A DNA stretch of 64,000 bases from Dendrobates tinctorius (Eukaryota). The notes beneath the pieces were generated by a model. It was not told where the DNA came from and searched no databases. It worked only from the letters and a program-made list of their open reading frames with translations. The stretch spans positions 4,464,001 to 4,528,000 of the forward strand of contig NW_027361959.1 of the NCBI RefSeq assembly GCF_039654945.1. The letters run 5' to 3'. Of this stretch, positions 6,801 to 58,554 are shown piece after piece; the first letter of the stretch is position 1; every line of letters starts with the position of its first letter. Made by a program: the position numbers and the translations under genes.

Positions 6801-7700
6801 GGGGCCCCTTTAGATCATTTGAGGATGACAGAGACTTTCCCTGCAAAAAACTTTGGGAGCAACCACCACTTTGAGTCTTCATCAGTTGGCTGGGAAGCCC
6901 ACAATAGGTTGTGAAGAGAGAGGATTTCTGCCACAAGCTTGTAGGATATTTGTAAGGGCCTGATATGACGTACCCATAGCACTATGTCCACTGATGAAGT
7001 GAGGCACCCTTGAACCTTCACTGCATAGAAGTAAGAGAATGCAAGATCAACAAATTCTCTCCAGATCTTCCAAATCCTGTTGTTGGGGTGACCGACATTC
7101 AAACAGTGTCCAGAACAAATCCCAGGTATTGGAAATGATGAGCGGGAAGGAGATGGGACTTGATTTTGATCACTAGGAATCTATGATGGCCCAGAGTAAT
7201 CCAGACATGGGGCCTGAATAGAACTTCTGATGTAGCCTTTATCTGTCAATTGTCCAGATGCAGAATGAAATATATTCCTTCCAAACATAGGGCTGCCATC
7301 ATAACCACTGCAAATTTCATTACCACTCTCATAGCTGCAGACCTGTAAATTGAAGGTGCCAGATACAACCTTGGATTTTCACCGCAAATCTGAGAAATTT
7401 CCTGTTGGCAAGAAGGACTGGGATGTGTACATAGGAATCCAATAGATCTATAGTGTCCAGGAACGCTCTCTGTTGGATAATAGATCTGATTGATCTTATG
7501 ATGGGGTTTTTTTTCTCGTGTCTAAGTAAGGTCGATCCATTCTGCCTGCTGGACAGAAGAGACTTGAACAGTTTCCTTGAGAAGAAACACCTTCACTCAA
7601 GAAGATGAGCGTTGTGTATGTAATTCAGATACAACTTGTTTCTGGGAGCAGTTTTGAGTTTCAGAGAATAATCTTTGTAAATTGTGGAACAAACCCAAGT
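6800..7700 (-). mobile_element. Second decayed DIRS-like RT/RNase H fragment
   Basis: Minus strand near 7350-7460 reads LDTIDLLDSYVHIPVLLANRKFLRFAVK...WHLQF, paralleling the DIRS RT at 1045..1722. Confidence 0.65.
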
Positions 7701-7898
7701 CTTTTGAAGTCTGTGCCCAAACTAAAGCGAATGCAGCCAATCTCCCACCCACCTGTTGGACTCAGAGCCTGAAATCACACTTCTGTAGTATTTTAGTGCA
7801 TGCAAAGCCCCAAAGACAGGATCACTCATGCCTGGAGGGCACAATACATAGTCTCTGGGATCCAACTTCACTCAAACCCTCATGTTTTTTCAGTTTAA

Positions 7899-8090
7899 GG
7901 GTGCAGTCAGCTGGCTGTATAAATTGGACTGAGATTGGAAAGCAGTGCACAGACTGGTCGACGGCACTCCTGACCCTGACAGCCTCATATATTTCTATGC
8001 AGCTGTCATGCTCAGATTGGGAGAGCCACCAGCCAGTAAGTGCACTGCTTTGGATTTCGGTTTGATTTATACATCCTTTTGACTGCACCC
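7899..8090. mobile_element. Small palindromic MITE (Harbinger-type termini)
   Basis: GGGTGCAGTCA...TGACTGCACCC with ~60-bp imperfect inverted arms, flanked by TAA/TTA. Confidence 0.6.
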
Positions 8091-30166: not shown

Positions 30167-31259
30167 GTGTATAACAGTGCCTACTGAATGTTTGCTAAAT
30201 TCATTTGTTGCATTTAACTCAATACTTACTGCTGTATAGCCCTGTTGGGGCCAGTAGAGATGTTATCAGGTGTAAGGTGTTGCTAGCAAATGGATGCAGC
30301 CAGGCCCTGAGCCTTTGATTGTCTAACATCCCCTGGTGTGCTAGGCAATTGGTAATTTATTCCAAATCAGTTCCCACAATCCCTCTCACCTGATCCTCTA
30401 CTCAGTCCTATATATTCAGATGCTGCCTAGGAGGGCACGTGTGCGGGTCAGGCACGTGTGTCCCTGCAGCATAAGTATCTTGAAGATGCAGTTATTACTA
30501 CGGCAGTTAGTCTCGGCAGGAGTCAGGACCCCACACTATCTATCTGTCTCTTTTGGGTACGTCTGATGAGTAAGCCCTTCTTATTACTTGGACTTAAGGT
30601 ACTGTCACAATAAACGATCGCACCAGCGATCACGGCAACGACACGACCTGGGAGAGATCGTTAGAACATCGCTATATGATCGTTAGTTAGCTTCCAAACA
30701 GGAAGATCTCATAAACGACACATCTGCGATCAGCGATCTGTATAACGACCTCGGGGGTCGTTGGGACCTGTCACACAGCATGTATTGTTAAAGACCCAGA
30801 CCTAGATAGGCGTGATTGAGCGCATCATTTTCCACTCCCCTCAACCCAGATTGGTCATCACTATATGGCACGGTATGGCATGACTGTTGCTGTCACAGCT
30901 CTCGCTTTGTGATTGGACGACAGAGTAATAAAGGACGACGCAATAGCGCTCCCTTTCATTGTTCTCGAGCGCTGTGGTTACCTTAATGCGTCCTGCCCGC
31001 CTTCTGTGATTCAAGACCTGAGATCCATTGTGTGGCGCTGCTGCGTTCGCCCTCGATTCATTGATTCCATCAGGATCTCCATACAGTCTTGTAAGGTAGG
31101 CACTTATTTTTATAATTTTTTTATTTTAACATTTTTTCGTGTCATTAACATTTTTGAATTACATGTTTGTTTAGCAGCCTTGGTAGTTTTCCTTCCACCG
31201 CCCTCCGCTATCACATATCTATCTCGGACCTTTTTTTTTTCCTGCCGCGCCCACCATTA

Positions 31260-32206
31260 GGCTAAGTGCACACGTACCGGAACTCTCGCGGAAATTACCG
31301 CGAGAATTCCGGAATTCCAGTCCGCGGGAAAATCGCATTTTAAATTCCCGCGATTTTCCAGCGGAAAAACTAGCATTGTGCAAGCGTATTTAGCTTGCAA
31401 AATGCTAGCGTTCTCCAAGCGATCTGTAGCATCGCTTGGAGAACTGATTGACAGGTTGGTCACACTCGTCAAACATAGTGTTTGACGAGTGTGACCAACT
31501 TTTTACTACTGAGGCCGCCTATGCGGCATCAGTAGTAAAAGATAGAATGTAAAAAAAAAATAAAAAATGGTGTTTTTATTCTTACCTTCCGACGTCCCGC
31601 GCAGGCGTTCCCAGTAGTCCTTTGCGAAAATGCCCGCGATGACGTCAGTTCTCGCGGGAACGCGACGTCTCGCGGGAATTCGCGATGACGTCGCGCGAAT
31701 TACCGCGAGACGTCGCGATCCCGCGAGATCGGACGCCATCGCGGGCATTTTCGCAAAGGACTACTGGGAACGGGAGCGTGGAGAGAGGCGGGAAGGCTGC
31801 GCGGGACGTCGGAGGGTAAGAATAACAATATTTTTTATTTTAAATTCTATTTTTTACAGGGATATGGTACCCAAAGCCCGGAGGACAGTCTCCTCTCCTC
31901 CGGACCGTGGGTACCATCCGCAATTGTTCTGCTTACTTTCCGCATGGTGTGCACAGCCACATGCGGGAAGTAAGCGGAACAATGCATTCCTATGGGTGCG
32001 GGATCGCCGCGATTCCGCAAAATAATGAGCATGCTGCGGTTTTTACCGCGAAGCGATTCCGCCGCGGTAAAAACCGCAGCATTAGCACAGCATTGCGGAA
32101 TCCCATAGGAATGCATGTGATGCTTATTTTTCGCGTTTTCGCGGCAAAATCGCACGGTTAAAACTGCCACGGAAACGCGAAAAAAACGCCACGTGTGAAC
32201 TCAGCC
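31260..32206. mobile_element. Harbinger-type MITE (CpG-rich, internally palindromic) nested in the Harbinger
   Basis: TTA|GGCTAAGTGCACACGT ... ACGTGTGAACTCAGCC|TTA; central inverted repeat ~31550-31840. The same terminus recurs at ~52422. Confidence 0.88.
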
Positions 32207-32579
32207 TTACTGTGTTGTTGGCTATCACTGTAATTTTTTTTTGGGGGCCAGCCATGTTATTTCTGCCGCGTCAATTTCTTGTCAGCTTTTTTACTTGTCG
32301 TCTATCTCTGTGATTTTTTGGTGCAGCAAATTTTTTTTCTGCTGCGCCCACCACTGCCTTTTTCTGCAGCTGTGTAAACTGTTGTTGTCCATCTAATTTT
32401 TTTTTTGGGTGGCAGGCAGCCATTTTAGTTTCAGCCGTGCCCATCTCCGCCATTTTATGATCCTAGGTGTGTTATAAGTTGTTGGTAATGTACGCATTTT
32501 AATTTATCCTATTTTTTTAATAAAACAAATGTTTCTATTAGTATTGTGCCATTTTAACATTATCCTTTCATTATTACAG

Positions 32580-33784
32580 ATGGCTGATAAGCACGAATTC
32601 CTGCGGGACTTCATAGAGCTTTACCGCACGATGCCTTGCTTATGGAGAATAAAGTCGGCTGATTATAGTAACCGACCTAAAAAGAAGGAGGCCTACCAAA
32701 AACTTGTCGAGCTTACAAAACAACATTACCCCAGTGAGCCAGCGGATGAAGCATCGGTTAAAAAAAGGATTCAGGCCATACGCACAGTGTACCGAAAAGA
32801 AGTGAACAAAGTCGAGAATTCAACCAAGTCGGGAGCGGGGTCGGAGGATGTTTATGTGCCGAAACTTTGGTACTTCGAACTTCTCTCTTTCACAAGGGAC
32901 CAAGAAGTTCCGAGAAAAATGGCATCTATCTTGGCCCCAGACCCATTGATCCAGCATGACTCCCCTGTCGGTGATGTAAGTACCTTGATTTTACAACTCA
33001 TAGTAATGTACGTGGCCATTAGGAATAGAATTTATGAATAATTAAGGAAACATTGACACAATAGCAGACGTTATCCCGTAACGTAATGATAATTGATCTA
33101 GCTTTACGCTAGATGCCTACCTATTTGACATACCGTTGAAGGACAAATTAAAAACCATTGATACAACCCCCTTTATTCATCTTGTAGCTGTATTTGGCTG
33201 TTGTGAAGGTATATTTCTTTTGCTTGTGATGTAACATGTATTTTCTGTTCCCATAGGACACAGAAGAGGCTGGCATTTCTACACCCATAATCACGCCAGA
33301 GCAACACAGCTTCGCATCTACGACACAAGAGGAGGAAACAGAGACACCATCCCCATCTGCACCATCCGCCTCTGTGCCGAGGCAATTGACATTTTCCGGG
33401 CGCAAAAGGAAGGCCCCCACCTCGGAGACACCACAATTTATTGAACTGGCAAAAAAAGTTTTAACTACACCTCAGAACCTGACCGGCTTTGCGTTCTATG
33501 CAAATGAAAAGCTGCCAACACTAGACCCAGTTCAGCGTCTCCATGCAGAAAGGCTTATGCTACAAGTTTTGAGTGAAGCCTCAATGGGGAAACTTACAGA
33601 CACAATAGCTTTCATGGACAGACGTCAGTACCCCCAAAACGCTTGGCCACAGAATCCTGAGACTCCAGAGCCTACAATGTGGAGGGAGCATCCGCCAAAC
33701 CAAGGCCATGTTCCTGCACCTTATTATTTAACTCCGCCTAGGCACCGTGTAAATGAAAAAGATCCATATTTTTTACAATTGTAG
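32580..33784 (+). CDS. Harbinger MADF (Myb/SANT-like) protein with BESS-like C-terminal motif; exons 32580-32975 + 33257-33784, 307 aa
   Basis: FIELYRTMPCLWRIKSADYSNRPKKKEAY...KKRIQAIRTVYRKE...YVPKLWYFELLSF. Canonical GT/AG, phase 0, open frame. Confidence 0.85.
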
Positions 33785-34139
33785 TTGTGCCAATTTGTTT
33801 TTTTAGAAAATTTTGTTTTGTATATAGTTTTACATATTTTTAATTTTTCAAATTGTTTAATTTTTTTTAAAAATAAAAATGTAATATTTTACATGAATTG
33901 TGGTGTCGTTTACTTGCCTTTGTTTCGTATTAGAACATTGATGTTAACAACACTTAAAAGATGGCTGTGCACATGAACATCTTTTACTAAAAGTAATATC
34001 CAGCCACGTATATAATCAGAAAATATTTAAATTTTTATTTCTGATATATTTAGAAACTCTTTTTTTTAACATCTTTTACAACATCAGAAACAAGGGGGTT
34101 TAACAAAAAAACATAAATAAACCTAAAAAAAAAAATAAA

Positions 34140-35373
34140 TTACTGGCTACTGCCACCCTCTTGTACACCCGCCAAGAACCTCTCCAGCATCACTCCGTGA
34201 ACGTCCATGGCTGCCAGAGTGACAGCCATAGCTGCTCTCATCCGCCGGTGAGAAGCCAGCAGTGCCTGTGCTGTGGGTATTTCTGTGGATGAAAAGAATG
34301 TAAAATGTAAACCTGGCAACTATAGAGACAGTAGAAACAAAAGGTACATGGCTTTTGTTTTTATCCTTACGGTATTGGGTCGGAACAGTTCTTTCTGGGG
34401 AGGGGCTAATATCCCACCCTAAAGCACTGGCACCAACGGCTATGAGAAAAAAAAACGGAAATTTTACACGGCAACACTTCCTCCTTTCCAGAGACAAAAG
34501 TTTAAGAACCCCTTTTTTTGTTATTTCATTTTTAAAAATAAATGTCTTTACTTACCGGATGGAGAGGCCACATCTATATCCTGGAGTGATGCTGGAGATG
34601 GGCTTGAAGCGGGCAAAGGGGTAGGTGGTGACCCTGTTTGATCCATCGTTGATGCTGGGGCTGTTGGATCATCCTGCGATGGCGGGCTTGATGGTAATGG
34701 TGGTTCTACAGATATGGAAAACAATCCATGGATATCTGCATGTTAAATGCTGTTTTTAATTGAAACCAAAAAAAAAAAAAAGGATATTGTTCTGCGAGAT
34801 GCTACTTCGTCACCGTTATTTGAATAAGAACACTTGAATAATAACAATAATTTATGTTATTCTCCACAGTGCAAGCTCATGTTTATTTTGTAAAAATAAA
34901 GGAAAATATTATTCAAAATTCATTTCACTTTCACTTCAACACATTGCTATGTCCCAGCATAACCACATGGCATTTTGCAAACTGTTAACAACTGAACAGT
35001 TAGCGAATGCTGAACGTGCAATCTGAGATATGAAGCGTTAACGCACACGTTAATAGACAACATACAACTTAAAAGAAATTTTTCTCATATTCTGTCAAAA
35101 ACACTCACCCTCTTCAATTTGGTTGTCAGACCTGATATTTGCTATGCGCTGGCTGGAGCGGTAGCGCAGATCTGCGAGTTTTTTTCGTATCTGCGTCGTA
35201 CTGCGCTCGACCCCAAACCTGCGCATGAGGCCTCTTTTAATTTTTTTCAACACCCTCTTCTTATGAAGCATGGGCCGGACATGTGTGGTGCAATCATAGT
35301 CCCTTGCGTCGATTTCCTGGATCAAGAATCGAACCTCAGGCTGTCCCCAGGGTACAGAACGCCTGGAAGCCAT
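34140..35373 (-). CDS. Additional Myb/SANT(trihelix)-like gene; exons 35373-35109, 34705-34556, 34439-34371, 34282-34140; 208 aa
   Basis: Exon 1 WGQPEVRFLIQEI...KKIKRGLMRRFGVERSTTQIRKKLADLRYR. All three introns are GT-AG and phase 1; total 627 nt, open to TAA. Confidence 0.78.
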
Positions 35374-35792
35374 ATTGTTTAGAATAATTTTTTCTAGGCC
35401 GCTGTAACGCCGCCCACGCATGCGTCATGACGTCACGGCGAACGGGAACGCAGATGCGTCATAGTCCCACAGCCTCTTTGAGATCGCACCTGAGATGCAT
35501 ATGTGTGGGCTTAACCTCATTTTTCCTTCTGCCCATTGCTCACTCCGCTACAATCACACCACCTGTTTTGCCCTCCCCCACATAACTCCCCCCTCACCAT
35601 CACCTCCACCTCATTCGGAGTTATGTCCCCAGTACTGTCCCTCCCCATCTCAACCCTCTTGTTTTTTGCCTTCTCGATATTAATACCCCCTCCCCATCAC
35701 ACCTCTGAATAAACACAACACAAAATTGAAATTTTTTTTTTTTTTTATTAGCACAAACTTTTAAACAGGATAACCAAGCAATCTTTACATAA

Positions 35793-37038
35793 CTATATTT
35801 GATGCTGCCAACTCACAGCACCAGGCCCGTTGAAGTATTGGCAGTACTTATCTCGGCTGGCCTTTGCATCGTCCTTGGTCCTGCCTTGATTGACAGGTCG
35901 AAGTCCTGCAATAGCGGGATCATTCTCACGCCATTCTCCGAGCACCACGTCACCATTGCTGTCTGAGTCCATGAAGCCTGGCGGACTGTAGGCTGCAGCA
36001 TCGCGTTGTCGTAAAAAATTGTGCAGCACGCAACAGGCCAACACCACGGAGTCTATGGATTCCAGCTTCATGTTTATTGGAGTGTGGAAAACCCTGAAGC
36101 GGTTGGCCATGATGCCGAACGCATTCTCAACAACGCGGCGTGCCCTTGACAGCCTGTAATTAAAAATACGCCTTTCCTCCGTCAGAGTCTTTAGTGGGTA
36201 CGGCTTCACAAGATGCGCATGAAGGGGGAAGGCTTCATCGCCCACAAACACAAAGTTAAGATTGGCGGTGGTGTCCATGTTGGTTGGCAAGTGCAGTTCA
36301 GAGTTCTTCAAGCGTTCACCAAAAATAGTGTGCTCCAAAACGCCTCCGTCCGAAACCCTCCCGTTCATGCCAACATCAACGTTTATAAATTCATAATTTG
36401 CGTTCACAAGGGCCATGAGGATCACACTGAAGTAGCCCTTGTAGTTGTAGAAATAACTTCCGCTGTTGGCTGGTTGTGTGATGCGCACATGTTTGCCATC
36501 CAAGGCACCACCACAGTTAGGGAACTGCCAAATACGTTCAAAATCAGATGCAATTTTTTTTCCATTCCGCCGCGGATTTAGGAAAAGGCATGTAGCTCCG
36601 TATACTGTGGACGATGGCGTTGCATGTCTCTGGGATTAACACGCTGAGGAGTGATCGGGAAACAGCTGCTGAAAATTGCAAGTCTTTCATTGAACGTCCG
36701 GTTGCCAGAAATCGCAGTGTGACAGCCAAACGTTCCTCTGCCGAAACAGCTGCACGCATCCGTGTATCCTGCCGTTCAATGAGTGGCCTCACACATTCCA
36801 GTAGGAGCTTAAATGAATCCTCCGACATCCGTAGATAATTGCGGAAATCCTGCGGATTCTTCTCCTGTAACTCCCTCACTAGATGCATGTGGGTGAATTT
36901 GGACCGCTGCTCAAGCCATTCTCTGGTCCACATGCGACGCTTTCGTTTGGAGTGCCTCTCTTCCACCCGCGCCTCTTCTTGTCGATCGCCCTCCATCAGT
37001 AAAGCTGCTGCCACAATCACACGTTCCGCGGTGGACAT
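35793..37038 (-). CDS. Harbinger DDE transposase (HARBI1-like family), one +1 frameshift in a T8 run at 36554-36561
   Basis: FRNYLRMS, RLAVTLRFLATG, (FPNCGGAL)DGKH, YFYNYKGYFS, GDEAFPL, FNYRLSRARRVVENAFG, CCVLHNF. Confidence 0.92.
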
Positions 37039-37968
37039 GTACATTATGTGCAACCAGCCCGGTAAAAGGAATAGAAAAGTTATTTAGAAAGTTTAAAAAA
37101 AAAAATTAATAGAGGATCAAATATTACAAAAAGATTTACTCACAAAGCAACAAAAATCAAACAATAGATGCGGTTTGCACTGCTAAAAGAAAAAACATTA
37201 GATATAACAAATTGTAATAAGATTAAAATAGTTTAAAAATGTGAACAAAACAAACAAAATATATGTACCTTGCTAAGGAAATCCAGAAAACCAGATGGTA
37301 GAAATGCCAAAGATGAATCGCAGTTGTGACTCCGACAGAATCCAAAACCAGCCTCACACGATACTATACTCAGCACGCACAAAGGACCAGAATGAGGTGT
37401 AATCCAAGCGCAATGGAACAATAGATGGGGACGCACTGTGACGTTTTAATTTATTGCTGGGGTGATGTAGTGGCCACCAATCGGTGCTGAGGGGCGTTAT
37501 TACAAATGAAACCTAGTCCCGCCTGCACCGCTGACATATGAGTCGCCAACGAGATCACTCGTCGTTCATAAAAGGGGTCAAACACAACGATTCAGGCACA
37601 CCAGCGGGACGCCAACGATCAAAATACGGTCCTGAACGTTCGTGCACGATCAGCGACATCGCAGCGGGGGCCACGTCGCCACAACATGTCACACGCAGCG
37701 ACATCGTCAGCGATGTCGCTGCTGCGTCAAAAAATCGAGGTCGCTTAAGCGATATCGCGAGCGATCTCGCTTAGTGTGACATACCCTTTAGCTTTTCTTA
37801 ACCTATCTTATTTCTTCACCATGTTTACATATGCCCTCACAGTGTTTACACCTTTAATCCTCACTCTCCTTCCCAGCACCCTCTAACCAAATAATCATCT
37901 CCCCTTCCCTCTTTCCTCCTCACCTGGGCTCCTCTGCTGAACTGCTCCTCAATCTCAAATCTGTCCAA

Positions 37969-40900
37969 ATGAAACACAAAACAAGCTGCCCACTCTCCTT
38001 CTCCCATCTGCTCTCCCTTTCTCTGCTTCTCCTCACTGCTGGCGACATATCTCCCAATCCTGGACCCCCACAGCTCATACCCCCCATTACTTCCCCTTCC
38101 TACCGCTCCCTATCTAATAAGAACTACCACAATCTTTCCAACTTAAAACCTGTGCCATTGACACCCAACCCCCTGCTCCCTCTCTCGGGAGCACTTTGGA
38201 ATGCCCGCTCCATCTGCAATAAGCTCCATGTGATTCATAACTTCTTTCTCTCTTGCAATCTTGCCTTCCGCTGCCTCACAGAAACATGGCTGACATCCTC
38301 TGACACCGCCTCCCCTGCTGCGCTGTGCTACGGCGGCCTCCACTTCACCAACACTCCTCGCCCTGGCAACAGACACGGTGGAGGAGTGGGTCTTCTCCTT
38401 TCTTCCAACTGCACCTTCAACCCAATCCCACCTCTTCCCTCAATTATCCTCCCCTCTTTTGAAGTCCACTCTGTCCGCATCTACTCTCCCTCCAACCTCC
38501 AAGTGGCCGTCATATACCGACCTCCAGGCCCGACCACTGCCTTCATTGACCAATTCTCTACCTGGCTTCTTCATTTTCTTTCAACTGACACCCCCACTAT
38601 CATCATGGGTGACTTCAACATCCCCACTGATACCCTTCAGTCAGCAGCCTCCAAACTCCTGTCTCTTACTTCATCCTTTGGACTTACTCAGTGGTCCTCC
38701 TCAGCCACCCACACAGACGGACACACATTAGACCTGGTCTTCACCCGTCTCTGCTCTCTTTCTAACTTCACCACCTCCCCTCTCCCTCTATCTGACCACC
38801 ATCTACTCACTTTCTCATCCCTGTCCTCCTCACCAGGCACCCAGGTCCAGCTACATGTGCACCCCCGCTAAAACCTTGCGCACCTAGACACCCACGCGCT
38901 CTCTGACTCTATTCTACCACTGGCATCCAAATCCTCACTCCATGACACAGACAGTGCCACTGCTTTCTACAATGCCACTCTCGCATCAGCTATTGACGCG
39001 GTTACCTCTCTTGTTCATGGCAGAATGCGACGTATCAACAGACAACCCTGGCACAACAACCCCACTAAAAAGCTCCGGCAAGTGTCCAGGATTGCAGAGC
39101 GGCGCTGGAAGAAAACAAATTCGCAAGATGACTTCACCACATTCAAACAGGCAACACTCGATTTCAAATCTGCCCTCACCTCTGCTAAACAGGCCTACTT
39201 CACAACCCTCGTATCTTCTCTATCTTACAACCACAAACAGTTATTCAAAACTTTTAACTCCCTCCTCCGCCCACCACTGCCTCCTCCAACCTCGCTCATC
39301 TCTGCCGAGGACTTTGCCACACACTTCAAAAACAAGATTGACCAAACGAGGCAAGTCTTCATCACTCAACCACCACAACCCCTTTGTATACCAAACCAAT
39401 GCCCAAACCCCATAACCTCACTCTCCAACATCACTGAAGGGGAGCTTAATCGTCTCTTCTCCAAATCGCACCTCACAACCTGTGCACTCGACCCCATCCC
39501 ATCCCACCTCCTCTCCAACCTCACCACCACACTTATCCCATCCCTAACCCACCTCTTCAACCTATCACTAATGTCCGGTACCTTCCCTTCTGCTTTCAAA
39601 CATGCAACAATCACGCCTATCCTTAAAAAGCCAACCCTCGACCCAACCGCTATGTCCAGCTATCGCCCAATATCGTTGCTCCCATTCGCTTCCAAACTCC
39701 TGGAACAGCACGTCCATGCTGAACTTTCCTCCCACCTATCGTCTCACTTGCTCTTTGACAATCTACAATCTGGTTTCCGCCCCCATCACTCCACTGAGAC
39801 AGCCCTGACCAAAATTACTAACGACCTACTTACAGCCAAATCAAATGGACAATACTCTATACTCCTGCTTCTAGACCTGTCCTCTGCATTCGACACAGTT
39901 GACCACTGCCTCCTACTACAGATCCTCTCCTCCTTCGGCATCAAAGGCCTTTCCCTATCCTGGATCTCCTCATACCTTTCCAATCGCACATTCAGCATCT
40001 CCCACTCCCACACCACCTCCTCATCCCATCCTCTCTCTGTTGGAGTCCCCCAAGGCTCTGTTTTAGAACCCCTACTTTTCTCAATCTATACACTTGGTCT
40101 GGGGCAACTCATAAAGTCCCACGGATTCCACTACCACCTTTATGCTGATGACACCCAGATCTACCTCTCTGGCCCAGACGTCACCTCTCTGCTGTCCAGA
40201 ATCCCAGAGTGTCTATCAGCCATATCCTCCTTCTCTCGCTTTCTCAAGCTCAATGTGGACAAATCTGAACTCATCATCTTTCCTCCATCTCTCAGATCTT
40301 CCTTACCCGACCTAGCTATAAAAATTAATGACATCACACTTTCCCCAGTACCGGAAGTCCGCTGCATCGGAGTAACCTTTGACTCTGCCCTGTCCTTCAA
40401 ACCGCACATCCAAGCACTTTCTACCTCCTGTCGCCTCCAGCTCAAAAATATTTCCAGAATCCGTCCTTTCCTCAACCCTCAGTCTACTAAAATGCTTGTG
40501 CATGCCCTCATCATCTCCCGCCTCGACTACTGCAACATCCTTTTCTGTGGTCTCTCTGCTAACACCCTCGCACCTCTCCAGTCCATCCTTAACTCTGCCG
40601 CCCGACTAATTCATCTCTCTCCTCGCTACTCTTCCGCTTCTCCCCTCTGCAAATCTCTTCACTGGCTCCCATTCCCTCAGCATATCCAGTTCAAATTACT
40701 AATACTGACCTTCAAGGCCATCTATAACCTGTCTCCCCCATATGTCTCTGAACTAATCTCCAGATACCTTCCCTCACGTAATCTCCGGTCCTCCCAAGAC
40801 CTCCTTCTCTCCTCTACACTTATTCGCTCCTCATCCAACCGCCTCCAAGACTTCTCCCGAATAGCCCCTATTCTCTGGAATTCTTTGCCCCAACAAGTCC

Positions 40901-51470: not shown

Positions 51471-53248
51471 AAATGAACGCTCAGTACTCACCAGAACAAA
51501 ATAATAAAAGTTGGAGTGCTTTGAAAAAAGCAGTTTGATCAGCAGTGTGCACACACCAATGCAGCTATCAGGTAGACTTAAAAGGCAGCCTAATCACCAC
51601 CAGCGCTGCTGCGCACAACAAAAATCCTCCCCTTTCACTGCACACTAAATGTACAGTGAAAAGCGCTATCAGCAGAAGCAATTTTTTTTTCTTCATTCCT
51701 GCCTAACGCTTTCCCTATTCAGAATCAGCAGCAGCAGCACCTCTCCCTATTCTAAGATCGGCAGAAGATGGCGGTCGGTGGTCACGGCCTTTTATACCCA
51801 CTGTGACGCCACACAAAGCCAGCCAATCACTTCAATGCCCTTCTCTAAGATGGTGGTGGCCGCTGTGCATGTCATCGCGTTGCCCACAGTGTGCGTCCTC
51901 CATCACTGGCTGAGAAAAGGCGCTGGAAGCATTTTTTGAAACGCGACTTTGGCGCTCGGCGACCTCATGGCCGACCTCATGCTATGGTCGGGTTTTGATC
52001 GGCGACACCCGACTTTAGCGAAAGTTGGCTATTTTTGAATTTGACCGACCTGTTTCGCTCAACTCTATTCTTGACCCCTTTGGTTGATGCCTGGTTTACA
52101 TCCACAAGATCTCCTTTCACTGGAAGTCATTTCTTGATCACATCATTCTCAGTATACACCGATCCAAGAGAACACCCCACAAAGTTGGCTCCCCAGCCAC
52201 CCGGCTTCCTGCTTGATTGACAGGGACTGTGCACTCCTGACAGTTCAGATCAAACCAGCCGCATCATTGCACCACCGGCCAACACTGTGTGCTTTACTAT
52301 GAAACCAGCAGCGGAGGAGAGCAAAGGCACTGAAACGTTCCGGAACTAGGTCGGCCACTGCTAGTCGATTACAAAGGTGGCCAGTAACATAGGCAATGAG
52401 TAGAAAAGGAGGTCTTGTTATGGCTAAGTGCACACGTTACAGAAAATTTCTGCTCAAAAACCTGAATCCCTTTCCAGAAACCGCACCTATTTTTCCGCGG
52501 CGTTTTTTGCGCGGTTTTGATGCGTTTTTTTCTGCAGCGGTTTCAAACCGCATGGAAGAAGCCAAAACCGCGGAAAAATCCGCAAAATTATGAGTTACCC
52601 GGAGTGCGCTGGGCGGTCTCTGTTCCATCACAGAGATGCTGAGGCGATAAATACAACGACTGAACCTGTTGACGTCACAGGACTCAGCGGAGTGTACACA
52701 TGGTATATGGTCACAGGACTTGGGGCTAAGACACACGGTCCGCGTCCCTCTAGACCTACCGTGCATGCTGTGTCGCAACCGCCAAGAAACACTGCTGACA
52801 GCAGCGCGGCGACAGACCCTGCCGCTATACGATAGTGCCCGGTAGCAGGCACACTGTCCGACGCTAGCACTGTGGAGGATGTGTTTAGTGGCCTGTAGCT
52901 TACCACTGACTGGTGCAGACTCTAAGGCTGGAGTCACACTAACCTGCGCAAAATACGCTCCGTATTTTACATGCGTAATACGGATCAATGACCACTAAAT
53001 AGTGGTCCGTAGGTCATCCGTAAGCAAGGTGAGGTCGCGTATTTTGCGCATGTGTGTCTCCGTATGCAATCCGTATGGCGAGATTTTCTCGCAGCCTTGC
53101 AAAATGGACATTTAACGGTTTTGAGGCCTGCAAACAATTTAAATCATTAGCCTGCACCCTATTTAGACACTCAGAAACAGGTGGCTGCCTACATTCTGTA
53201 CATTTCTCACCTTGCTTTCACGAGGTGTGTTGGTGTTCTTTGTGCAGC

Positions 53249-54765
53249 ATGTCAGAGGGTCTGACATTCAATACAACCGAGCAGGTTCTCTTTACCTGGC
53301 TTTTGTCACGGCGCTTTGGCCAACCATATCCTGTGATAGTGGATCCGCGGAGGAGGAGACGCATGTGGGTACATCCACTTTTGAGGCAACGACTCACAAG
53401 AGGGCATTTTCACCGCCTCTATTCGTCTCTGCGGGAGCATCCGGAAAAATTTTACCAGTACTGTCGAATGAGCATTTCCACATTTGATCGCCTCTTGGAG
53501 ACAGTGCGCCCTGGGATCACATTTCAGGACACTAGGATGCGCCAAGCCATATCTGCAGAGGAGCGACTTCTACTCACAATACGGTATGTACTCCACAACC
53601 ACATTCTATATGTTCATAATGTGTGTGTTAATTTATGTTTTTTGGCCTTCTTGGACAATGTTTAATACCCTCATCTTACTCAAAATATGTTTCACCTGAC
53701 ACAGCACAATGTTACATCTAATATGTACTGCATATCACTTAGTCATTGTGCCACCAAATATGTGTGTGTTGTTCTCTCTCATTTCCTACCAAGTTTGGTC
53801 GGCATGTAACTGATTTTTTTTTACTTTAGCCATTCTAACCTGGACTATTTCTGTTGTTCTACAGCTTCCTGTCCACTGGCCTGTCTTATGCCGCCCTCCA
53901 CCATGAGTTTCTCATTGGAAAGTCCACCATTTCAGGCATAGTGAGGTCTACATGTGCACAAATCTGGACAAGACTCCATCAGGTGGTCCTACCCGAGCCC
54001 AGGATGGAAGACTGGTTAAGGATTTCAAGGGACTTTGAGGAGGACTGCCAGTTTCCAAATTGTATTGGGGCCCTGGATGGCAAACATATCAGGGTGCGTA
54101 AGCCGCCGAACTCAGGGTCCCAATTCTTCAATTATAAGCAATACTTTTCTGTTGTATTGTTGGCTCTGGTAGACCCTCAATACAAGTTTATAATTGTGGA
54201 CATTGGGGCCTATGGAAGGACGGGAGACTCTAGAGTCTTCAATACTTCCATAATGGGTCGGCGGCTACGCACCAACCAGTTGGATCTACCACCACCATGC
54301 CAGCTACCAGGCTCCCCCGAACAATCAGTCCCTTATGTCCTTGTGGCAGATGAGGCCTTTCAGTTATCACGTAATGTCATGAGGCCATATCCCCGGCGCA
54401 ACCTTGACCACAGGCGCAGAATTTTTAACTTGCGCCTATCACGTGCTAGGCGACTGGTGGAGTGTTCCTTTGGGATTCTTTGTGCCAAATGGCGGGTACT
54501 CCAGTCTGCCATTCAGTTGAGTGAGCAAAATGTGAATGAAGTTGTCAAAGCCTGTGTTGTTCTGCATAACTTCACCAGGATATATGATTGTTCCTCCTCT
54601 GCTGGTGTTGTGCGTAGGCCGGACAATGTGCGCAGGGTGAGACCACCTATCATCCCTCAACGTAGACCGCTCTCTGGCCTCAAAGTGCGTGATATATTCA
54701 CTAATTACTTTATCTCACCTGAGGGGGCTACTTCTTGGCAAGAGAATGCTGTGTCTATGTTCTAA
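53249..54765 (+). CDS. Harbinger transposase, intact; exons 53249-53583 + 53865-54765, 411 aa
   Basis: Splice restores LTIRFLSTG; FPNCIGALDGKH, VADEAF, RARRLVECSFG, CVVLHNF; no stops. Confidence 0.92.
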
Positions 54766-55688
54766 TTTTTTTGGGTTCAAAGTGTGTCTAAATATATATT
54801 ACTCAAGCCTTTTTATGATTCTATGAGTGTTTCTTTGCATTGGTTGGTGTCTGTTAGTATGTTGTGAGGGATCGTGAGAAATCACACAGAGACGTTAACT
54901 AGAGTAGACAAATTTTTAGTTTTGCCTTGTTTTTTTGGTTTTGATTAAAGGCAAACATAATTTTGCCATAACATAAATTTGGCAATGGCCAAAATGACCC
55001 TTTGGGCCTTCGTTAACTTGATGTAACATTAACATAACAGAAAAAAACTGCAACAAACATTATGCAATAACAACATTGCTGCATGCCTACATTAACCTGG
55101 ATTAGGCAACAAAGGGTGAGCTCCATCACCAAAATAAAGTCAATAAGATAACACTCACATTTCCTCATAATGTTTTCCAAACATAGAAAGATTCCACCAT
55201 GACAGGCAAGGCTACCTCACATCTTTCACACAGATATTACCTGTCTGTAGAACAGACAATATTTAAGCATGCTATACTGGAAAGGATGAAAATACAAAAC
55301 TCACTTGTTAAGACATAGAGAGAGCGTGATATTGTGAATGCTGTTCGCCTCAAATTGGTTTACTAGAGAATGCTAATAACAAAGTTGACTACTTAACTAA
55401 AGGCAAGCACACCTTTCCTATGCATTAACAAGTGATTAGTGTATTTTCATCCTTTCAGGTAACAGTATAGCGCATTTAAATATTCTCTTTTATACACACA
55501 TGTAATATGTGTGAAAGGCGTGAGGTAGCGTTGCCTGTCATGATGGATTGTTTCATATGTTTGGAAAACATTGTTTACAAATGTGAGTGTTAAATTATGT
55601 TCTAAATGTTGGTGAAGGAGAACACCTGTTTTTTTCTCTAGATTAGAAGCACCAGTTACATGTCACTGGACATCTCCAAAGTTTGGAT

Positions 55689-57453
55689 TCATAAATCCTC
55701 ATATGTAGGGGAAGGGGAACGGGGAGGAACAGCCTGTGGGTGCTGCTGGACATTGTGGCCAACATCGCCCTGTGTGGGGCCATACTGTTGCCCATGATGC
55801 TGTTGTTGTCCAGCCTCCTGGGCCTGTTGGTGATACTGCCCAGAGTAATAATGATGATGGTGAGGGGCTTCTTGTTGGCTATGGTAGGCCCGTGGCTCAT
55901 ACCCACCAAGATAGCCAGATCGTCCCCAACCAGGTTGGGACCAGCCTCCAACACTGGGTGGGTACAAGTGGCCATATTGGTGGGGTTGGCTTGATGAAGA
56001 CATTTGGGGCTGCGGAATAGAAGGATGGGTAGGGGGAGGAAGGGGTTGAGGTGTTGGCCCACGTATTAGGGGCTGTTCAGACCCTGCTTGAGCAAGCATC
56101 TGTGTGGATGGTCTCATGCGCATTAAATTTCTTGGTGAGAGCTGCCACCTCTCCAGAAATTCAAACACCTCATATGGGGTATTGGGGGGGGTGCTTGCAT
56201 CAAGCAGGATCTGAATACACCCCCTAATACGGAGCCTGACCTCACGGGTAAGGGCACGGAGATAAAGGGTGAGGCTACGTGCATAGGCCTCCTCACCATC
56301 ATCTGTAGTGACTCTGGACAAGTAAGTCAGCACCCCAGTGTCCACATTGGTCCTGCTCTCTTGAATGGCGACCTGGCGCCTTCTTCTTATTCGCCGTGTT
56401 GCTAGAGCAGCCTGTGGGGAGGGCCTGATCTGGGCAGTTGGGCTGCTGCTCAAGTTGCCCATCTCTTCCAGGATGGGTGAGGTTGCAGCTGCAGACCGTC
56501 CTGGTGGTGTGTTGTGTCGGGCAGCCATTGTGTGCTCTTGTGATGCCTCCTCTTCAGACATCCTTCTTGTAGGGGGAGAAGATGGGCCAGCCACCTCATC
56601 CCCTACAGGATCAATAACGGGCTCTGCCTCTGAGGCCGTTCCTCGATCCGTAAGGTTGGATTGAGTTCTGTTATGAAATAGAACAGAGGCAAAAATACAT
56701 CAATATTTTTGTCCCTGTAAAGTATTTGTGTAATGTTTTTGTGTCATGTGGTGTGAGGTATGTACTTACGGTCTCAGAGCCAGAATTGGGGCGAGGAAGT
56801 TCAGCCGGTCATAATATATATATTTCCGCTTGACATGGCCAGCATCCCCACTCCTGGACCGCTGCTGGCGTTCCCGGCGGTATTGGTCCCGGATGCTTCT
56901 CCACCGTTTCATCACATCTTCCACTGCAATGTGACAGGAAAGATTGTCAAAATCACATATTGGAGAGGTCACATTTTCAAACAGTAGTCTAGGCATGGGG
57001 CCTTATGGGGTGTGCGTTCTACCCATGGTGGAATATGTAATTGGGCCGATACCCAGGGTCTCATTAGCTCCCCTGAAACTAATTTTTGTGGCTAGGAGGA
57101 TGAGGAGCTTGTGGCCTAACCCCTAATTATGGCTGTGTGAAGCCACGTGTCACATCCTAATGTAACGGCCTCATAAGGCTAAAATTACATGCCCAGGAAG
57201 GGGGGGCTGATTGTAGAGTCATTTTATAGCGCGCGCTAACGTTAATAATATTTTTATGGTTGCACTTACGAATTTTCTGCTGCTCCTCACGTGGTCTGTC
57301 ACCGAAGTCATGGTACATCTGGCGACAGATGCGCCTCCATGACGCCTCCTTTCTTGTGCGGTTCGCATAGTTTGCGTCGCGTGGGCCCCATATTTCTGGA
57401 CGCTCCTGCACCAGCACAATTAGCATCTCCACATTTATGTAAGTGGATGCCAT
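55689..57453 (-). CDS. Harbinger MADF protein, intact; exons 57453-57270, 56923-56770, 56667-55689, 438 aa
   Basis: LIVLVQERPEIW...KEASWRRIC; KRWRSIRDQYRRE...YIYYDRLNFL; BESS-like YARSLTLYLRAL; P/Q/H-rich tail; GT-AG phases 1 and 2 consistent. Confidence 0.88.
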
Positions 57454-58554
57454 GCTGCTGCTGTACTCCGTGGAGGCGTACTTCCTGGATGTCTGGAGCG
57501 CTTTTTGAGCTCATTTGCATGTCTACGCTTCCTGATGATGGATTGGCCCATTTCCTGTTCACCAGCCAAAAGACCTGCGTATTGCTCGCAGGTCACACGT
57601 GTGTTCAGTGTGTAATCTGTATTTTTTGCGCACCCATTGACTTGCATTGGCGTGCTACGGGTGTAGTACGCTGACAATCGCAGCATGCTGCGAGTGGCAC
57701 GGAGCGGAGGATACGGAGGAGAAATATACGCCTGGTGCGAGTGACCCCATAGAGAATCATTGGTCCGTGTCTAATGCGTGCTTTTTGCGCCTCTCACGCA
57801 CCCGTATTCCTCGCCAGTGTGACTCCGGCCTAACTCTAGTTCCCTATCCACACACGTAATATCAGAGGGAGGGGAATCTTAATGAGTCATTTGCAAGTCC
57901 ATACATCCATCATCATTCACACGCAACTAGAGTCTATACTAGCGCATGGCCGTGGTTCTGGCAGCACCAGTCTCCTGTTAGGAAATTCACGCGGTTGGGT
58001 TCCCTTTAATGGTAGAAGTTTGGAAATTGAGTATTTTATGCATATGAGAAAAATCCGCATTCATCACTGAAGATAAAAGCTGAAAATGGACCAAATCTCT
58101 GATGTGTCCTGTGCTCCAGATATCTGCTCCAGAACAGGATGCGGCACATTGTCAGCACCTGCAGACGTCTCTGAGGACACGGCGCTCCACGGGCTTCAGG
58201 TATTAGGCCGCGTTCACACAGTCAGTATTTTACCTCAGTATTTGTAAGACAAAACCAGGAAAGAAACAGAGGAAAAGCAGTCGCGCAGTCTTTTTCCTGA
58301 GTTTTTGGAGCAGACACTGAGCAGGAACACCAACTCAGTGGTTCTGCCTGAGGCGGAATAGGGGTTTCTGCCCCTCAGATGCCCTGCCCACAGAGACAGC
58401 ACAGGCTGATCATGTATTGTACTCTTATGGCAGATTCCCGCTCATTTCCGACTTTCAGTACAGGGATTATGTCGCGGATTTTTAACGCAGATTTCACTGT
58501 GCTCAGGACGCGAAAGAATGACGACTACCGACCACGTGCACCTACAGCTGAGAA

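What the first reader, a model, noticed from the sequence alone, without database searches (positions are those of the whole stretch)
30597..37787. Three-gene Harbinger transposon with a second, intact, intron-containing Myb/SANT-like gene
Established: autonomous PIF/Harbinger elements normally encode two proteins, a DDE nuclease and one Myb/SANT/MADF partner. Seen: within one TIR/TSD-bounded unit lie the transposase (-), a 2-exon MADF/BESS-like gene (+), and a third gene between them (35373-34140, -). Its four exons (265/150/69/143 nt) splice via three phase-1 GT-AG introns into an uninterrupted 208-aa protein: N-terminal trihelix/Myb-SANT-like domain, Pro/Ser linker, amphipathic C-terminal helix (AQALLASHRRMRAAMAVTLAAMDVHGVMLERFL). 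The ORF track misses most of it. Inference: this could be a three-component transposition system in which the second DNA-binding protein acts as regulator, targeting factor or anti-silencing factor, and a possible source of domesticated MSANTD/NAIF1-like genes. I cannot confirm novelty without a search.
Basis: partly seen in the sequence, partly recalled or inferred. Interest (0 to 1): 0.85.

Follow-up and report, generated by a model that had tools for sequence, protein, structure and literature searches.

The report
Frog Harbinger transposon with third gene
This poison-frog jumping gene carries, besides its cutting enzyme and the usual DNA-binding helper, a second and unrelated DNA-binding helper gene that has been kept intact in related elements of at least four frog families, so it probably has a working role that no one has yet tested.

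Summary
Window 30597-37787 is one PIF/Harbinger element: TTA target-site duplication, 13-nt terminal inverted repeats, a DDE_Tnp_4 transposase (frameshifted in this copy), and a 2-exon MADF gene.

Gene 3 is not a nested insert. The same three genes lie together at nine further loci in Dendrobates, Ranitomeya, Anomaloglossus, Xenopus laevis and Hyperolius. In two of these loci (L001, L009) all three lie inside mapped TIRs.

All named relatives are anuran. Between the two D. tinctorius copies, dN/dS of gene 3 is 0.11-0.13, like the transposase (0.11-0.22) and MADF (0.12).

The protein has an N-terminal Myb/SANT trihelix domain (nearest Zeste, Z 8.1, and GT-1, Z 7.0), a disordered linker and a confident C-terminal helix. 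It shows no profile similarity to the element's own MADF protein.

Public contigs carry joints at exactly introns 2 and 3, and a RefSeq paralogue has the same exon plan.

Function is inferred, most likely a second DNA-binding accessory subunit. The papers searched describe Harbingers as two-gene, with SET or TET third genes known in oomycetes and fungi. Repbase and Dfam could not be checked. First readers of this scan noted a third gene in Harbingers elsewhere in this genome.

The parts
30594..30596 (.). left target-site duplication, TTA
   Evidence: the same TTA stands at 37788-37790
30597..30609 (+). left terminal inverted repeat, AGGTACTGTCACA, followed by subterminal AGCGAT / AACGAY repeats
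   Evidence: homologous end in L003
31260..32206 (.). nested palindromic Tourist-like MITE with its own TTA duplication (31257-31259 and 32207-32209); not part of the family
   Evidence: the L003 alignment skips this stretch
32580..32975 (+). gene 2 (MADF) exon 1
   Evidence: Pfam MADF_DNA_bdg E 2.5e-17; orthologues at all related loci
33257..33784 (+). gene 2 (MADF) exon 2 with stop; a conserved BESS-like stretch by eye, Pfam negative
34140..34282 (-). gene 3 exon 4: conserved C-terminal amphipathic helix and stop
   Evidence: pLDDT above 90 in the model of the paralogue; contig joint 34282->34371
34371..34439 (-). gene 3 exon 3 (linker)
   Evidence: contig joints on both sides
34556..34705 (-). 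gene 3 exon 2 (Pro/Ser-rich disordered linker)
   Evidence: contig joint 34439->34556
35109..35373 (-). gene 3 exon 1: Myb/SANT-like trihelix DNA-binding domain
   Evidence: Pfam Myb_DNA-bind_4 E 3e-5, below cut-off; family HMM E 3.7e-38 and the only hit in the window; fold match to Zeste and GT-1
35374..35792 (-). spacer between the transposase stop and the gene 3 start; has TGACGTCA, CGCATGCG and GGGCGG within 65 nt of the ATG; presumed own promoter (inferred)
   Evidence: the motifs are only partly shared by other copies
35793..37053 (-). transposase, DDE_Tnp_4; two reading frames in this copy, break at the T8 run 36554-36561
   Evidence: other copies lack one base at 36554; intact 415-418-aa gene models in L002 and L004
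37775..37787 (-). right terminal inverted repeat
   Evidence: subterminal inverted repeat I4
37788..37790 (.). right target-site duplication, TTA

Best explanation
Shown:
- The stretch is one copy of an anuran lineage of PIF/Harbinger DNA transposons.
- Members carry three genes: a DDE transposase, a MADF protein and a second, unrelated Myb/SANT-like protein (gene 3).
- Gene 3 has an N-terminal trihelix domain, a disordered linker and a C-terminal amphipathic helix.
- Gene 3 is spliced, intact in this copy, and under purifying selection as strong as that on the transposase.

Inferred:
- Gene 3 works in the element's own transposition as a second sequence-specific accessory subunit.
- Its trihelix domain would bind one of the two repeated subterminal motifs (AGCGAT-type and AACGAY-type).
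- Its C-terminal helix would tie it to the MADF protein and/or the transposase, so that the two DNA-binding adaptors together bring the transposase to the ends.

This particular copy cannot move by itself because its transposase frame is broken.
For: The gene trio recurs:
- Order Tnp> gene3> <MADF in L001, L003, L004, L005, L006 and L007; L002 has Tnp> gene3> without a MADF gene in that place.
- Order Tnp> <MADF gene3> in Xenopus L009 and Hyperolius L010.
- L001 (21-nt TIRs, GGA on both flanks) and L009 (18-nt TIRs, TAA on both flanks) enclose all three genes.

Selection and co-divergence:
- dN/dS between the window and L003 is 0.11 for gene 3 exon 1, 0.13 for its last exon, 0.12 for MADF and 0.11-0.22 for the transposase.
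- Gene 3 identity falls in step with transposase identity across 8 loci (Spearman 0.76).

Protein:
- Three-helix domain plus a helix at 167-203 with pLDDT above 90.
- Zeste DNA-binding domain Z 8.1, GT-1 Z 7.0.
- No profile similarity to the element's own MADF family (hhalign probability 0.5%).

Expression and splicing:
- Contig joints lie exactly at introns 2 and 3, and one loose end matches the L003 paralogue's exon 3.
- RefSeq model XP_073431730.1 has the same exon plan.

DNA sites: two repeated motif classes occur in both ends.

Gene content is kept although gene order changed. This favours a needed function over a passenger.
Against: - No binding, interaction or transposition data exist.
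- Other Harbingers manage with MADF alone, including the one at 52926-57830 of this window, so a second adaptor is not generally required.
- The two-motif reading of the ends is by eye and k-mer count only, and Xenopus ends are dominated by one motif.
- The kind of run X3 (RNA or DNA) is unknown.
- Synonymous sites are saturated for most between-species pairs.
- Only loci found through an annotated gene-3 protein were examined, so relatives that lack gene 3 would have been missed.
Confidence: 0.45

Rival explanations
1. Gene 3 is an element-encoded regulator rather than a needed subunit. As a DNA-binding protein it would compete for the subterminal sites or for the promoters and damp transposition or transcription, in the manner of truncated-transposase repressors in other families. 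This would limit damage to the host and help the lineage persist.
For: - It has a DNA-binding domain plus an interaction helix and no catalytic part.
- AGCGAT-like motifs also lie just upstream of gene 3 in L004 and L007.
- Two-gene Harbingers show that MADF alone can suffice.
Against: - Self-restraint is weakly selected at the level of the element. Yet gene 3 shows dN/dS of about 0.1, equal to the transposase.
- It is retained in four frog families despite a rearranged gene order.
Confidence: 0.22
2. Gene 3 acts on the host rather than on the ends. It could be a targeting, transcription-activating or anti-silencing factor that tethers the element or its transposase to chromatin or keeps the element expressed, as the domesticated plant Harbinger pair HDP1/HDP2 does.
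For: - Myb/SANT trihelix proteins are often chromatin or transcription factors; matches include Zeste, GT-1 and a SANT-like chain of the TIP60 complex.
- Harbinger-derived pairs with anti-silencing roles exist (PMC5339849, listed).
- Third genes acting on chromatin marks are known in HarbingerS (SET) and PHISTA (TET/JBP) (PMC12730594).
Against: - The DNA-binding exon changes fast between subfamilies (dN 0.3-0.5) and tracks transposase divergence. This fits recognition of element-specific sites better than recognition of a fixed host target.
- There is no catalytic or known chromatin-reader domain.
Confidence: 0.2
3. Gene 3 is a passenger: a captured or nested sequence, or a gene-prediction artefact, with no role for the element.
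For: - The Pfam score is below the curated cut-off.
- This copy's transposase is dead.
Against: - The same gene stands in the same unit at nine other loci in five species.
- It has no TIR or TSD of its own; only A/T runs flank it.
- Strong purifying selection, a conserved C-terminal helix out to Xenopus, and spliced forms in public contigs plus a RefSeq model.
Confidence: 0.04

Closest known systems
Canonical two-component Harbinger (Harbinger3_DR of zebrafish: transposase + Myb-like protein; Sinzelle et al. 2008, as cited in PMC13668399 and PMC9179366)
   Same: DDE_Tnp_4 transposase, 3-bp TWA target duplication, short TIRs, subterminal repeats, and a separately encoded Myb/SANT-type DNA-binding protein.
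   Different: Here there are two separately encoded Myb/SANT-type proteins of unrelated sequence families (MADF and a trihelix/Myb_DNA-bind_4/5-like one), both conserved and both under selection.
MADF-partner Harbingers of insects and nematodes (PMC9710019; PMC13668399), and the two-gene element at 52926-57830 of this window
   Same: The MADF partner gene and the transposase.
   Different: Those elements have no gene-3-like domain. The family HMM hits only 35424-35098 in the whole window.
Three-gene members of the Harbinger superfamily: HarbingerS with a SET methyltransferase gene, and PHISTA of rust fungi with TET/JBP plus a further protein (PMC12730594)
   Same: A precedent that Harbinger-type elements can carry a conserved third gene.
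   Different: Those third genes are chromatin- or DNA-modifying enzymes, or proteins without a Myb/SANT domain, in oomycetes and fungi. Here the third gene is a second DNA-binding adaptor, in vertebrates.
Domesticated Harbinger pairs and Myb-like derivatives: HARBI1/NAIF1, MSANTD1-4 (PMC9392472), Drosophila DPLG/DPM (PMC9710019), Arabidopsis HDP1/HDP2 (PMC5339849)
   Same: A Myb/SANT-like domain of Harbinger origin. 7 of 17 family members give weak Myb_DNA-bind_5 hits, the NAIF1-type Pfam family.
   Different: Gene 3 still sits inside mobile elements. No relative outside frogs reached E 0.001. No link to MSANTD or NAIF1 was shown.
Multi-protein plant DNA transposons (En/Spm TnpA + TnpD; MuDR mudrA + mudrB), from my own knowledge
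   Same: Accessory DNA-binding or helper proteins encoded beside the transposase.
   Different: They belong to other superfamilies and their proteins are unrelated.

Membership tests
PIF/Harbinger superfamily (the element) | DDE transposase of the DDE_Tnp_4 / Plant_tran type | tested here: met
   PF13359 E 2.4e-33 and PF04827 E 1.7e-9
PIF/Harbinger superfamily (the element) | 3-bp target-site duplication, usually TWA | tested here: met
   TTA on both sides; TAA/TAA in Xenopus L009; GGA/GGA in L001
PIF/Harbinger superfamily (the element) | short terminal inverted repeats | tested here: met
   13 nt with 10 of 13 matching; 21 nt in L001; 18 nt in L009
PIF/Harbinger superfamily (the element) | separately encoded Myb/SANT/MADF DNA-binding partner | tested here: met
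   MADF E 2.5e-17
PIF/Harbinger superfamily (the element) | mobility: same-family copies at different sites, or an empty site | tested here: inconclusive
   Public contigs hold many stretches at least 90% alike, and L003 is a related copy at 77-87% identity. No empty site or near-identical second copy could be fetched.
Myb/SANT-like trihelix DNA-binding domain (gene 3) | match to Pfam Myb_DNA-bind_4 or Myb_DNA-bind_5 above the curated cut-off | tested here: not met
   24.7 bits against a cut-off of 27 (E 3e-5). In the family, 7 of 17 members hit each model, all below cut-off.
Myb/SANT-like trihelix DNA-binding domain (gene 3) | three-helix Myb/SANT fold | tested here: met
   AlphaFold2 model of paralogue P0028 has helices 11-24, 34-53 and 59-72 with pLDDT about 80-94. 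Zeste DNA-binding domain Z 8.1, 2.7 A over 71 residues; GT-1 Z 7.0. Z values of this size are moderate.
Myb/SANT-like trihelix DNA-binding domain (gene 3) | sequence-specific DNA binding | not testable with these tools
   needs EMSA or DAP-seq
Harbinger Myb-like partner in the functional sense (Harbinger3_DR / NAIF1 type) | binds the transposase, imports it into the nucleus and recruits it to subterminal repeats | not testable with these tools
   Only indirect evidence: co-inheritance with the transposase, and selection.
MADF-BESS proteins (gene 2) | MADF domain | tested here: met
MADF-BESS proteins (gene 2) | BESS motif | tested here: not met
   No PF02944 hit at E up to 10 in exon 2 of the window, L001 or L009. 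A BESS-like pattern is visible by eye only.
Duplicate of the element's own MADF gene (considered for gene 3) | detectable profile similarity to the MADF family of these elements | tested here: not met
   hhalign probability 0.5%, E 0.13

The most novel reading that the evidence does not exclude
Frogs harbour an old, distinct branch of Harbinger transposons whose transposition machine has three parts. Two unrelated Myb/SANT-type adaptors (MADF and the gene 3 protein) would each read their own class of subterminal repeat, pair through their C-terminal helices, and both be required to deliver the transposase. This would make it the first tripartite cut-and-paste system of this superfamily in animals and a ready source of co-domesticated protein pairs.
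Probability: 0.3. Interest if true: 0.75.

Novelty: new variant of a known kind. Interest (0 to 1): 0.6.

Why it matters
Every paper I could read describes Harbinger as a two-protein system: a transposase plus one Myb/MADF partner.

A second, unrelated DNA-binding partner has been kept under selection in elements of Pipidae, Hyperoliidae, Aromobatidae and Dendrobatidae. That suggests the recruitment step can use two adaptors, or that these elements carry their own regulator.

Either answer bears on three questions:
- how ends are recognised;
- how DNA-binding modules and binding sites co-evolve;
- how pairs such as HARBI1/NAIF1 or the MSANTD genes arose.

It is directly testable with the established two-plasmid Harbinger assay.

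It also matters for annotation. RefSeq lists these genes as 'uncharacterized protein' host genes in several frogs.

Tried and rejected
Readings rejected:
1. Nested insert. No TIR or TSD of its own surrounds gene 3; only A/T runs at the two poly(A)-signal regions pair up (I10 and I15). The position is also conserved across species.
2. Gene 3 as a recent duplicate of MADF. Rejected by hhalign.
3. Transposase-gene 3 fusion. The long Hyperolius proteins P0023 and P0036 carry no transposase domain.
4. A conserved gene 3 promoter. The CRE, NRF1-like and GC-box motifs of the window copy are only partly shared.

Searches that gave little or nothing:
5. BESS in gene 2: Pfam negative.
6. Sequence search of solved structures with the family profile: nothing. 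Foldseek against PDB gave no E below 0.001, although Zeste and GT-1 ranked near the top.
7. Profile search of the 5.8-billion protein set. Only the 8,000 candidates sharing most words were scored. It added just more Ranitomeya and Dendrobates copies.
8. The look-up of encoding contigs returned nothing for P0008 and P0010.
9. Literature searches for a three-ORF or two-Myb Harbinger found none.
10. One empty helper script and one script that stopped on a division by zero (redone).

Limits:
11. RNA proof. No run on record as RNA holds the stretch, and the kind of run X3 is unknown.
12. A joint at 37053->37183 in a diverged copy has non-canonical ends and was left unexplained.
Full report
**1. What is in the window**

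The stretch 30597-37787 is bounded by TTA at 30594-30596 and 37788-37790. Its 13-nt inverted ends are AGGTACTGTCACA and AGGGTATGTCACA.

It holds three genes:
- On the minus strand, a transposase with a full DDE_Tnp_4 match (E 2.4e-33).
- On the plus strand, a two-exon gene with a MADF domain (E 2.5e-17; exons 32580-32975 and 33257-33784, 307 aa).

The transposase of this copy reads in two frames, 37053-36544 and 36503-35793. The break lies at a run of eight T (36554-36561). Contigs of other copies lack one base at 36554. Related loci have uninterrupted 415-418-aa gene models. This copy is therefore non-autonomous, unless the extra base is an assembly error.

A 947-bp palindromic Tourist-like MITE with its own TTA duplication is nested at 31260-32206. 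It is absent from the other D. tinctorius copy.

**2. The gene 3 model**

- Exons are 35373-35109, 34705-34556, 34439-34371 and 34282-34140, i.e. 265/150/69/143 nt.
- There are three GT-AG phase-1 introns with good splice signals, and the frame is open for 208 aa.

Three independent lines support the splicing.
- Contigs of public run X3 (same species label) carry joints 34282->34371 and 34439->34556 with CT..AC ends. These are precisely introns 3 and 2.
- A diverged copy gives a joint from 35109, the exact intron 1 donor, to a point 6 nt from the predicted acceptor.
- One loose end at 34282 matches exon 3 of the paralogue in L003 perfectly.

Further support:
- The RefSeq protein XP_073431730.1 of Dendrobates tinctorius (P0028, 209 aa) aligns collinearly over all four exons.
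- The first and last intron positions are shared by the Ranitomeya and Anomaloglossus genes.

Caveat: the kind of run X3 is not on record, so the joined form could in principle be DNA. Even then it would derive from a spliced RNA.

**3. Is gene 3 part of the element?**

An exhaustive HMMER search with exon 1 found only 25 relatives at E up to 0.001 among 1.84 billion representatives. Every named one is from a frog: Dendrobates, Ranitomeya, Anomaloglossus, Xenopus laevis, Hyla, Lithobates, Engystomops or Hyperolius.

I fetched ten loci. Nine of them carry the three genes together.

| Order | Loci |
|---|---|
| Tnp> gene3> <MADF, as in the window | L001, L006, L007 (Ranitomeya); L003 (second D. 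tinctorius copy); L004, L005 (Anomaloglossus) |
| Tnp> <MADF gene3> | L009 (Xenopus laevis); L010 (Hyperolius riggenbachi) |

L002 (Anomaloglossus) has Tnp> gene3> with no MADF gene found in the expected place. Further along it carries a gene 3 exon 1 head-to-head with a MADF gene, as in the Xenopus order.

Two of these elements could be delimited, and each encloses all three genes:
- L001 7459-14070, with 21-nt TIRs and GGA on both flanks.
- L009 6425-12188, with 18-nt TIRs and TAA on both flanks.

Gene 3 has no inverted repeats or duplication of its own.

Identity of gene 3 to the window copy falls in step with transposase identity across the eight loci compared (rho 0.76, n = 8, not phylogenetically independent).

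The Xenopus transposase core is closer to this one (62%) than is the transposase of the two-gene Harbinger in the same window (41%). That two-gene element (52926-57830) has transposase and MADF genes but no gene-3-like domain.

**4. Selection**

Between the window and L003, dN/dS values are:

| Region | dN/dS | Detail |
|---|---|---|
| Gene 3 exon 1 | 0.11 | dN 0.122, dS 1.16 |
| Gene 3 last exon | 0.13 | |
| MADF exon 1 | 0.12 | |
| Transposase | 0.11-0.22 | |

Where synonymous sites are not saturated, other pairs give 0.1-0.3 for exon 1. Gene 3 and MADF change faster at the protein level than the transposase (dN about 0.3-0.4 against 0.1 between species-level subfamilies). This is the usual pattern for Harbinger DNA-binding partners (PMC9179366).

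**5. The protein**

AlphaFold2 on paralogue P0028 with a 17-sequence family alignment gives:
- helices 11-24, 34-53, 59-72 and 74-86;
- a disordered stretch at 88-159;
- a long helix at 167-203 with pLDDT above 90.

The N-terminal domain is closest to the Zeste DNA-binding domain (Z 8.1, 2.7 A, 71 of 75 residues) and to the Arabidopsis GT-1 trihelix (Z 7.0) (also near the top in Foldseek). These Z values are moderate.

Pfam gives Myb_DNA-bind_4 at E 3e-5, below the curated cut-off. Across the family, 7 of 17 members hit Myb_DNA-bind_4 and 7 of 17 hit Myb_DNA-bind_5, all weakly. A language-model search agrees on Myb/SANT-like.

The C-terminal helix is conserved out to Xenopus.

A profile-profile comparison with the elements' own MADF domains finds nothing (probability 0.5%). 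Gene 3 is therefore not a recent MADF duplicate.

**6. Mechanism (inferred)**

- A gene kept intact with the transposase in several frog families, through a change of gene order, and under transposase-like constraint most likely serves the element's own propagation.
- Its build, a DNA-binding head, a flexible linker and an interaction helix, is that of an adaptor.
- Both ends of the dendrobatid elements are packed with two short repeat types, AGCGAT-like and AACGAY-like. Xenopus ends are dominated by AACGAT.

My preferred reading (0.45) is a second DNA-binding accessory subunit that works with the MADF protein to bring the transposase to the ends. The rivals are:
- a self-regulator (0.22);
- a host-directed targeting or anti-silencing factor (0.20);
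- a passenger (0.04).

None can be settled without experiments.

**7. Known or new?**

The papers I could search describe Harbingers as two-protein systems (PMC13668399, PMC9179366, PMC9392472, PMC9710019, PMC2836001).

Third genes are known in the superfamily, but they are of other kinds and in other hosts. Examples are a SET methyltransferase in HarbingerS, and TET/JBP plus a non-Myb protein in PHISTA of rust fungi (PMC12730594).

I found no report of a second Myb/SANT-type gene. Repbase and Dfam, where Xenopus Harbingers are catalogued, could not be consulted, so prior cataloguing is not excluded.

First readers of this scan noted a third gene in Harbingers on other pieces of this genome (s1-389108, s1-376931, s1-381499). 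I could not read those pieces. L003 is an independent D. tinctorius copy that I did check.

**8. Verdict**

The structural interpretation is supported and extended to an anuran-wide lineage. The function remains open. I rate it a new variant of a known kind, with interest 0.6.

Noticed in passing
window 31260-32206: A 947-bp strongly palindromic Tourist-like MITE (88-nt arms at 90% complementarity, plus further hairpins) with TTA duplication, nested in the left arm of the Harbinger. It is absent from the related copy L003.
   Followed up: partly
window 52926-57830: A second Harbinger of another family in the same window. It has an intron-containing transposase (41% identical in the core) and a MADF gene but no gene-3-like domain, so it is a two-gene element beside the three-gene one.
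   Followed up: partly
window 37969-38871 (+): A 300-aa ORF directly after the element with an APE-type endonuclease domain of a non-LTR retrotransposon (Exo_endo_phos, E 1.8e-10). Near its N-terminus stands GDISPNPGP, which resembles a 2A-type ribosome-skipping motif.
   Followed up: partly
L009 6425-12188 (Xenopus laevis): The MADF and transposase genes are interleaved on opposite strands. MADF exon 1 lies beyond the transposase stop, and MADF exon 2 (7924-7460) lies inside the transposase intron (7193-8061).
   Followed up: partly
L001 7701-8104 and 13433-13819 (Ranitomeya imitator): About 400 bp upstream of the transposase and upstream of the MADF gene are inverted repeats of each other (81-94%). 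These long subterminal inverted repeats may carry both promoters. The window copy has nothing comparable.
   Followed up: no
window 30597-37787 against L003: Mosaic divergence between the two D. tinctorius copies. The transposase region is 87% identical and the rest 76-79%. The synonymous difference is 0.59 in gene 3 exon 1 but 0.20 in its last exon. This suggests recombination between subfamilies or uneven constraint.
   Followed up: partly
L008 (Hyla sarda LOC130291530): A gene-3-like gene with several RefSeq isoforms, spread over about 100 kb of introns, with no MADF gene and only one weak, remote transposase-like hit (27% identity, about 55 kb from the Myb exon) in the 119-kb locus. It may be a domesticated or stranded copy.
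   Followed up: no
L007 9506-15294 (Ranitomeya imitator): Three gene-3-like first exons (one inverted) and a linker built of repeated units of about 29 aa, between the transposase and the MADF gene. This is local duplication within a distant subfamily.
   Followed up: no
window 37053-37183: A contig of run X3 skips 129 nt just upstream of the transposase start, with non-canonical ends (CC..TG). It could be a deletion variant or an unusual 5' intron.
   Followed up: no
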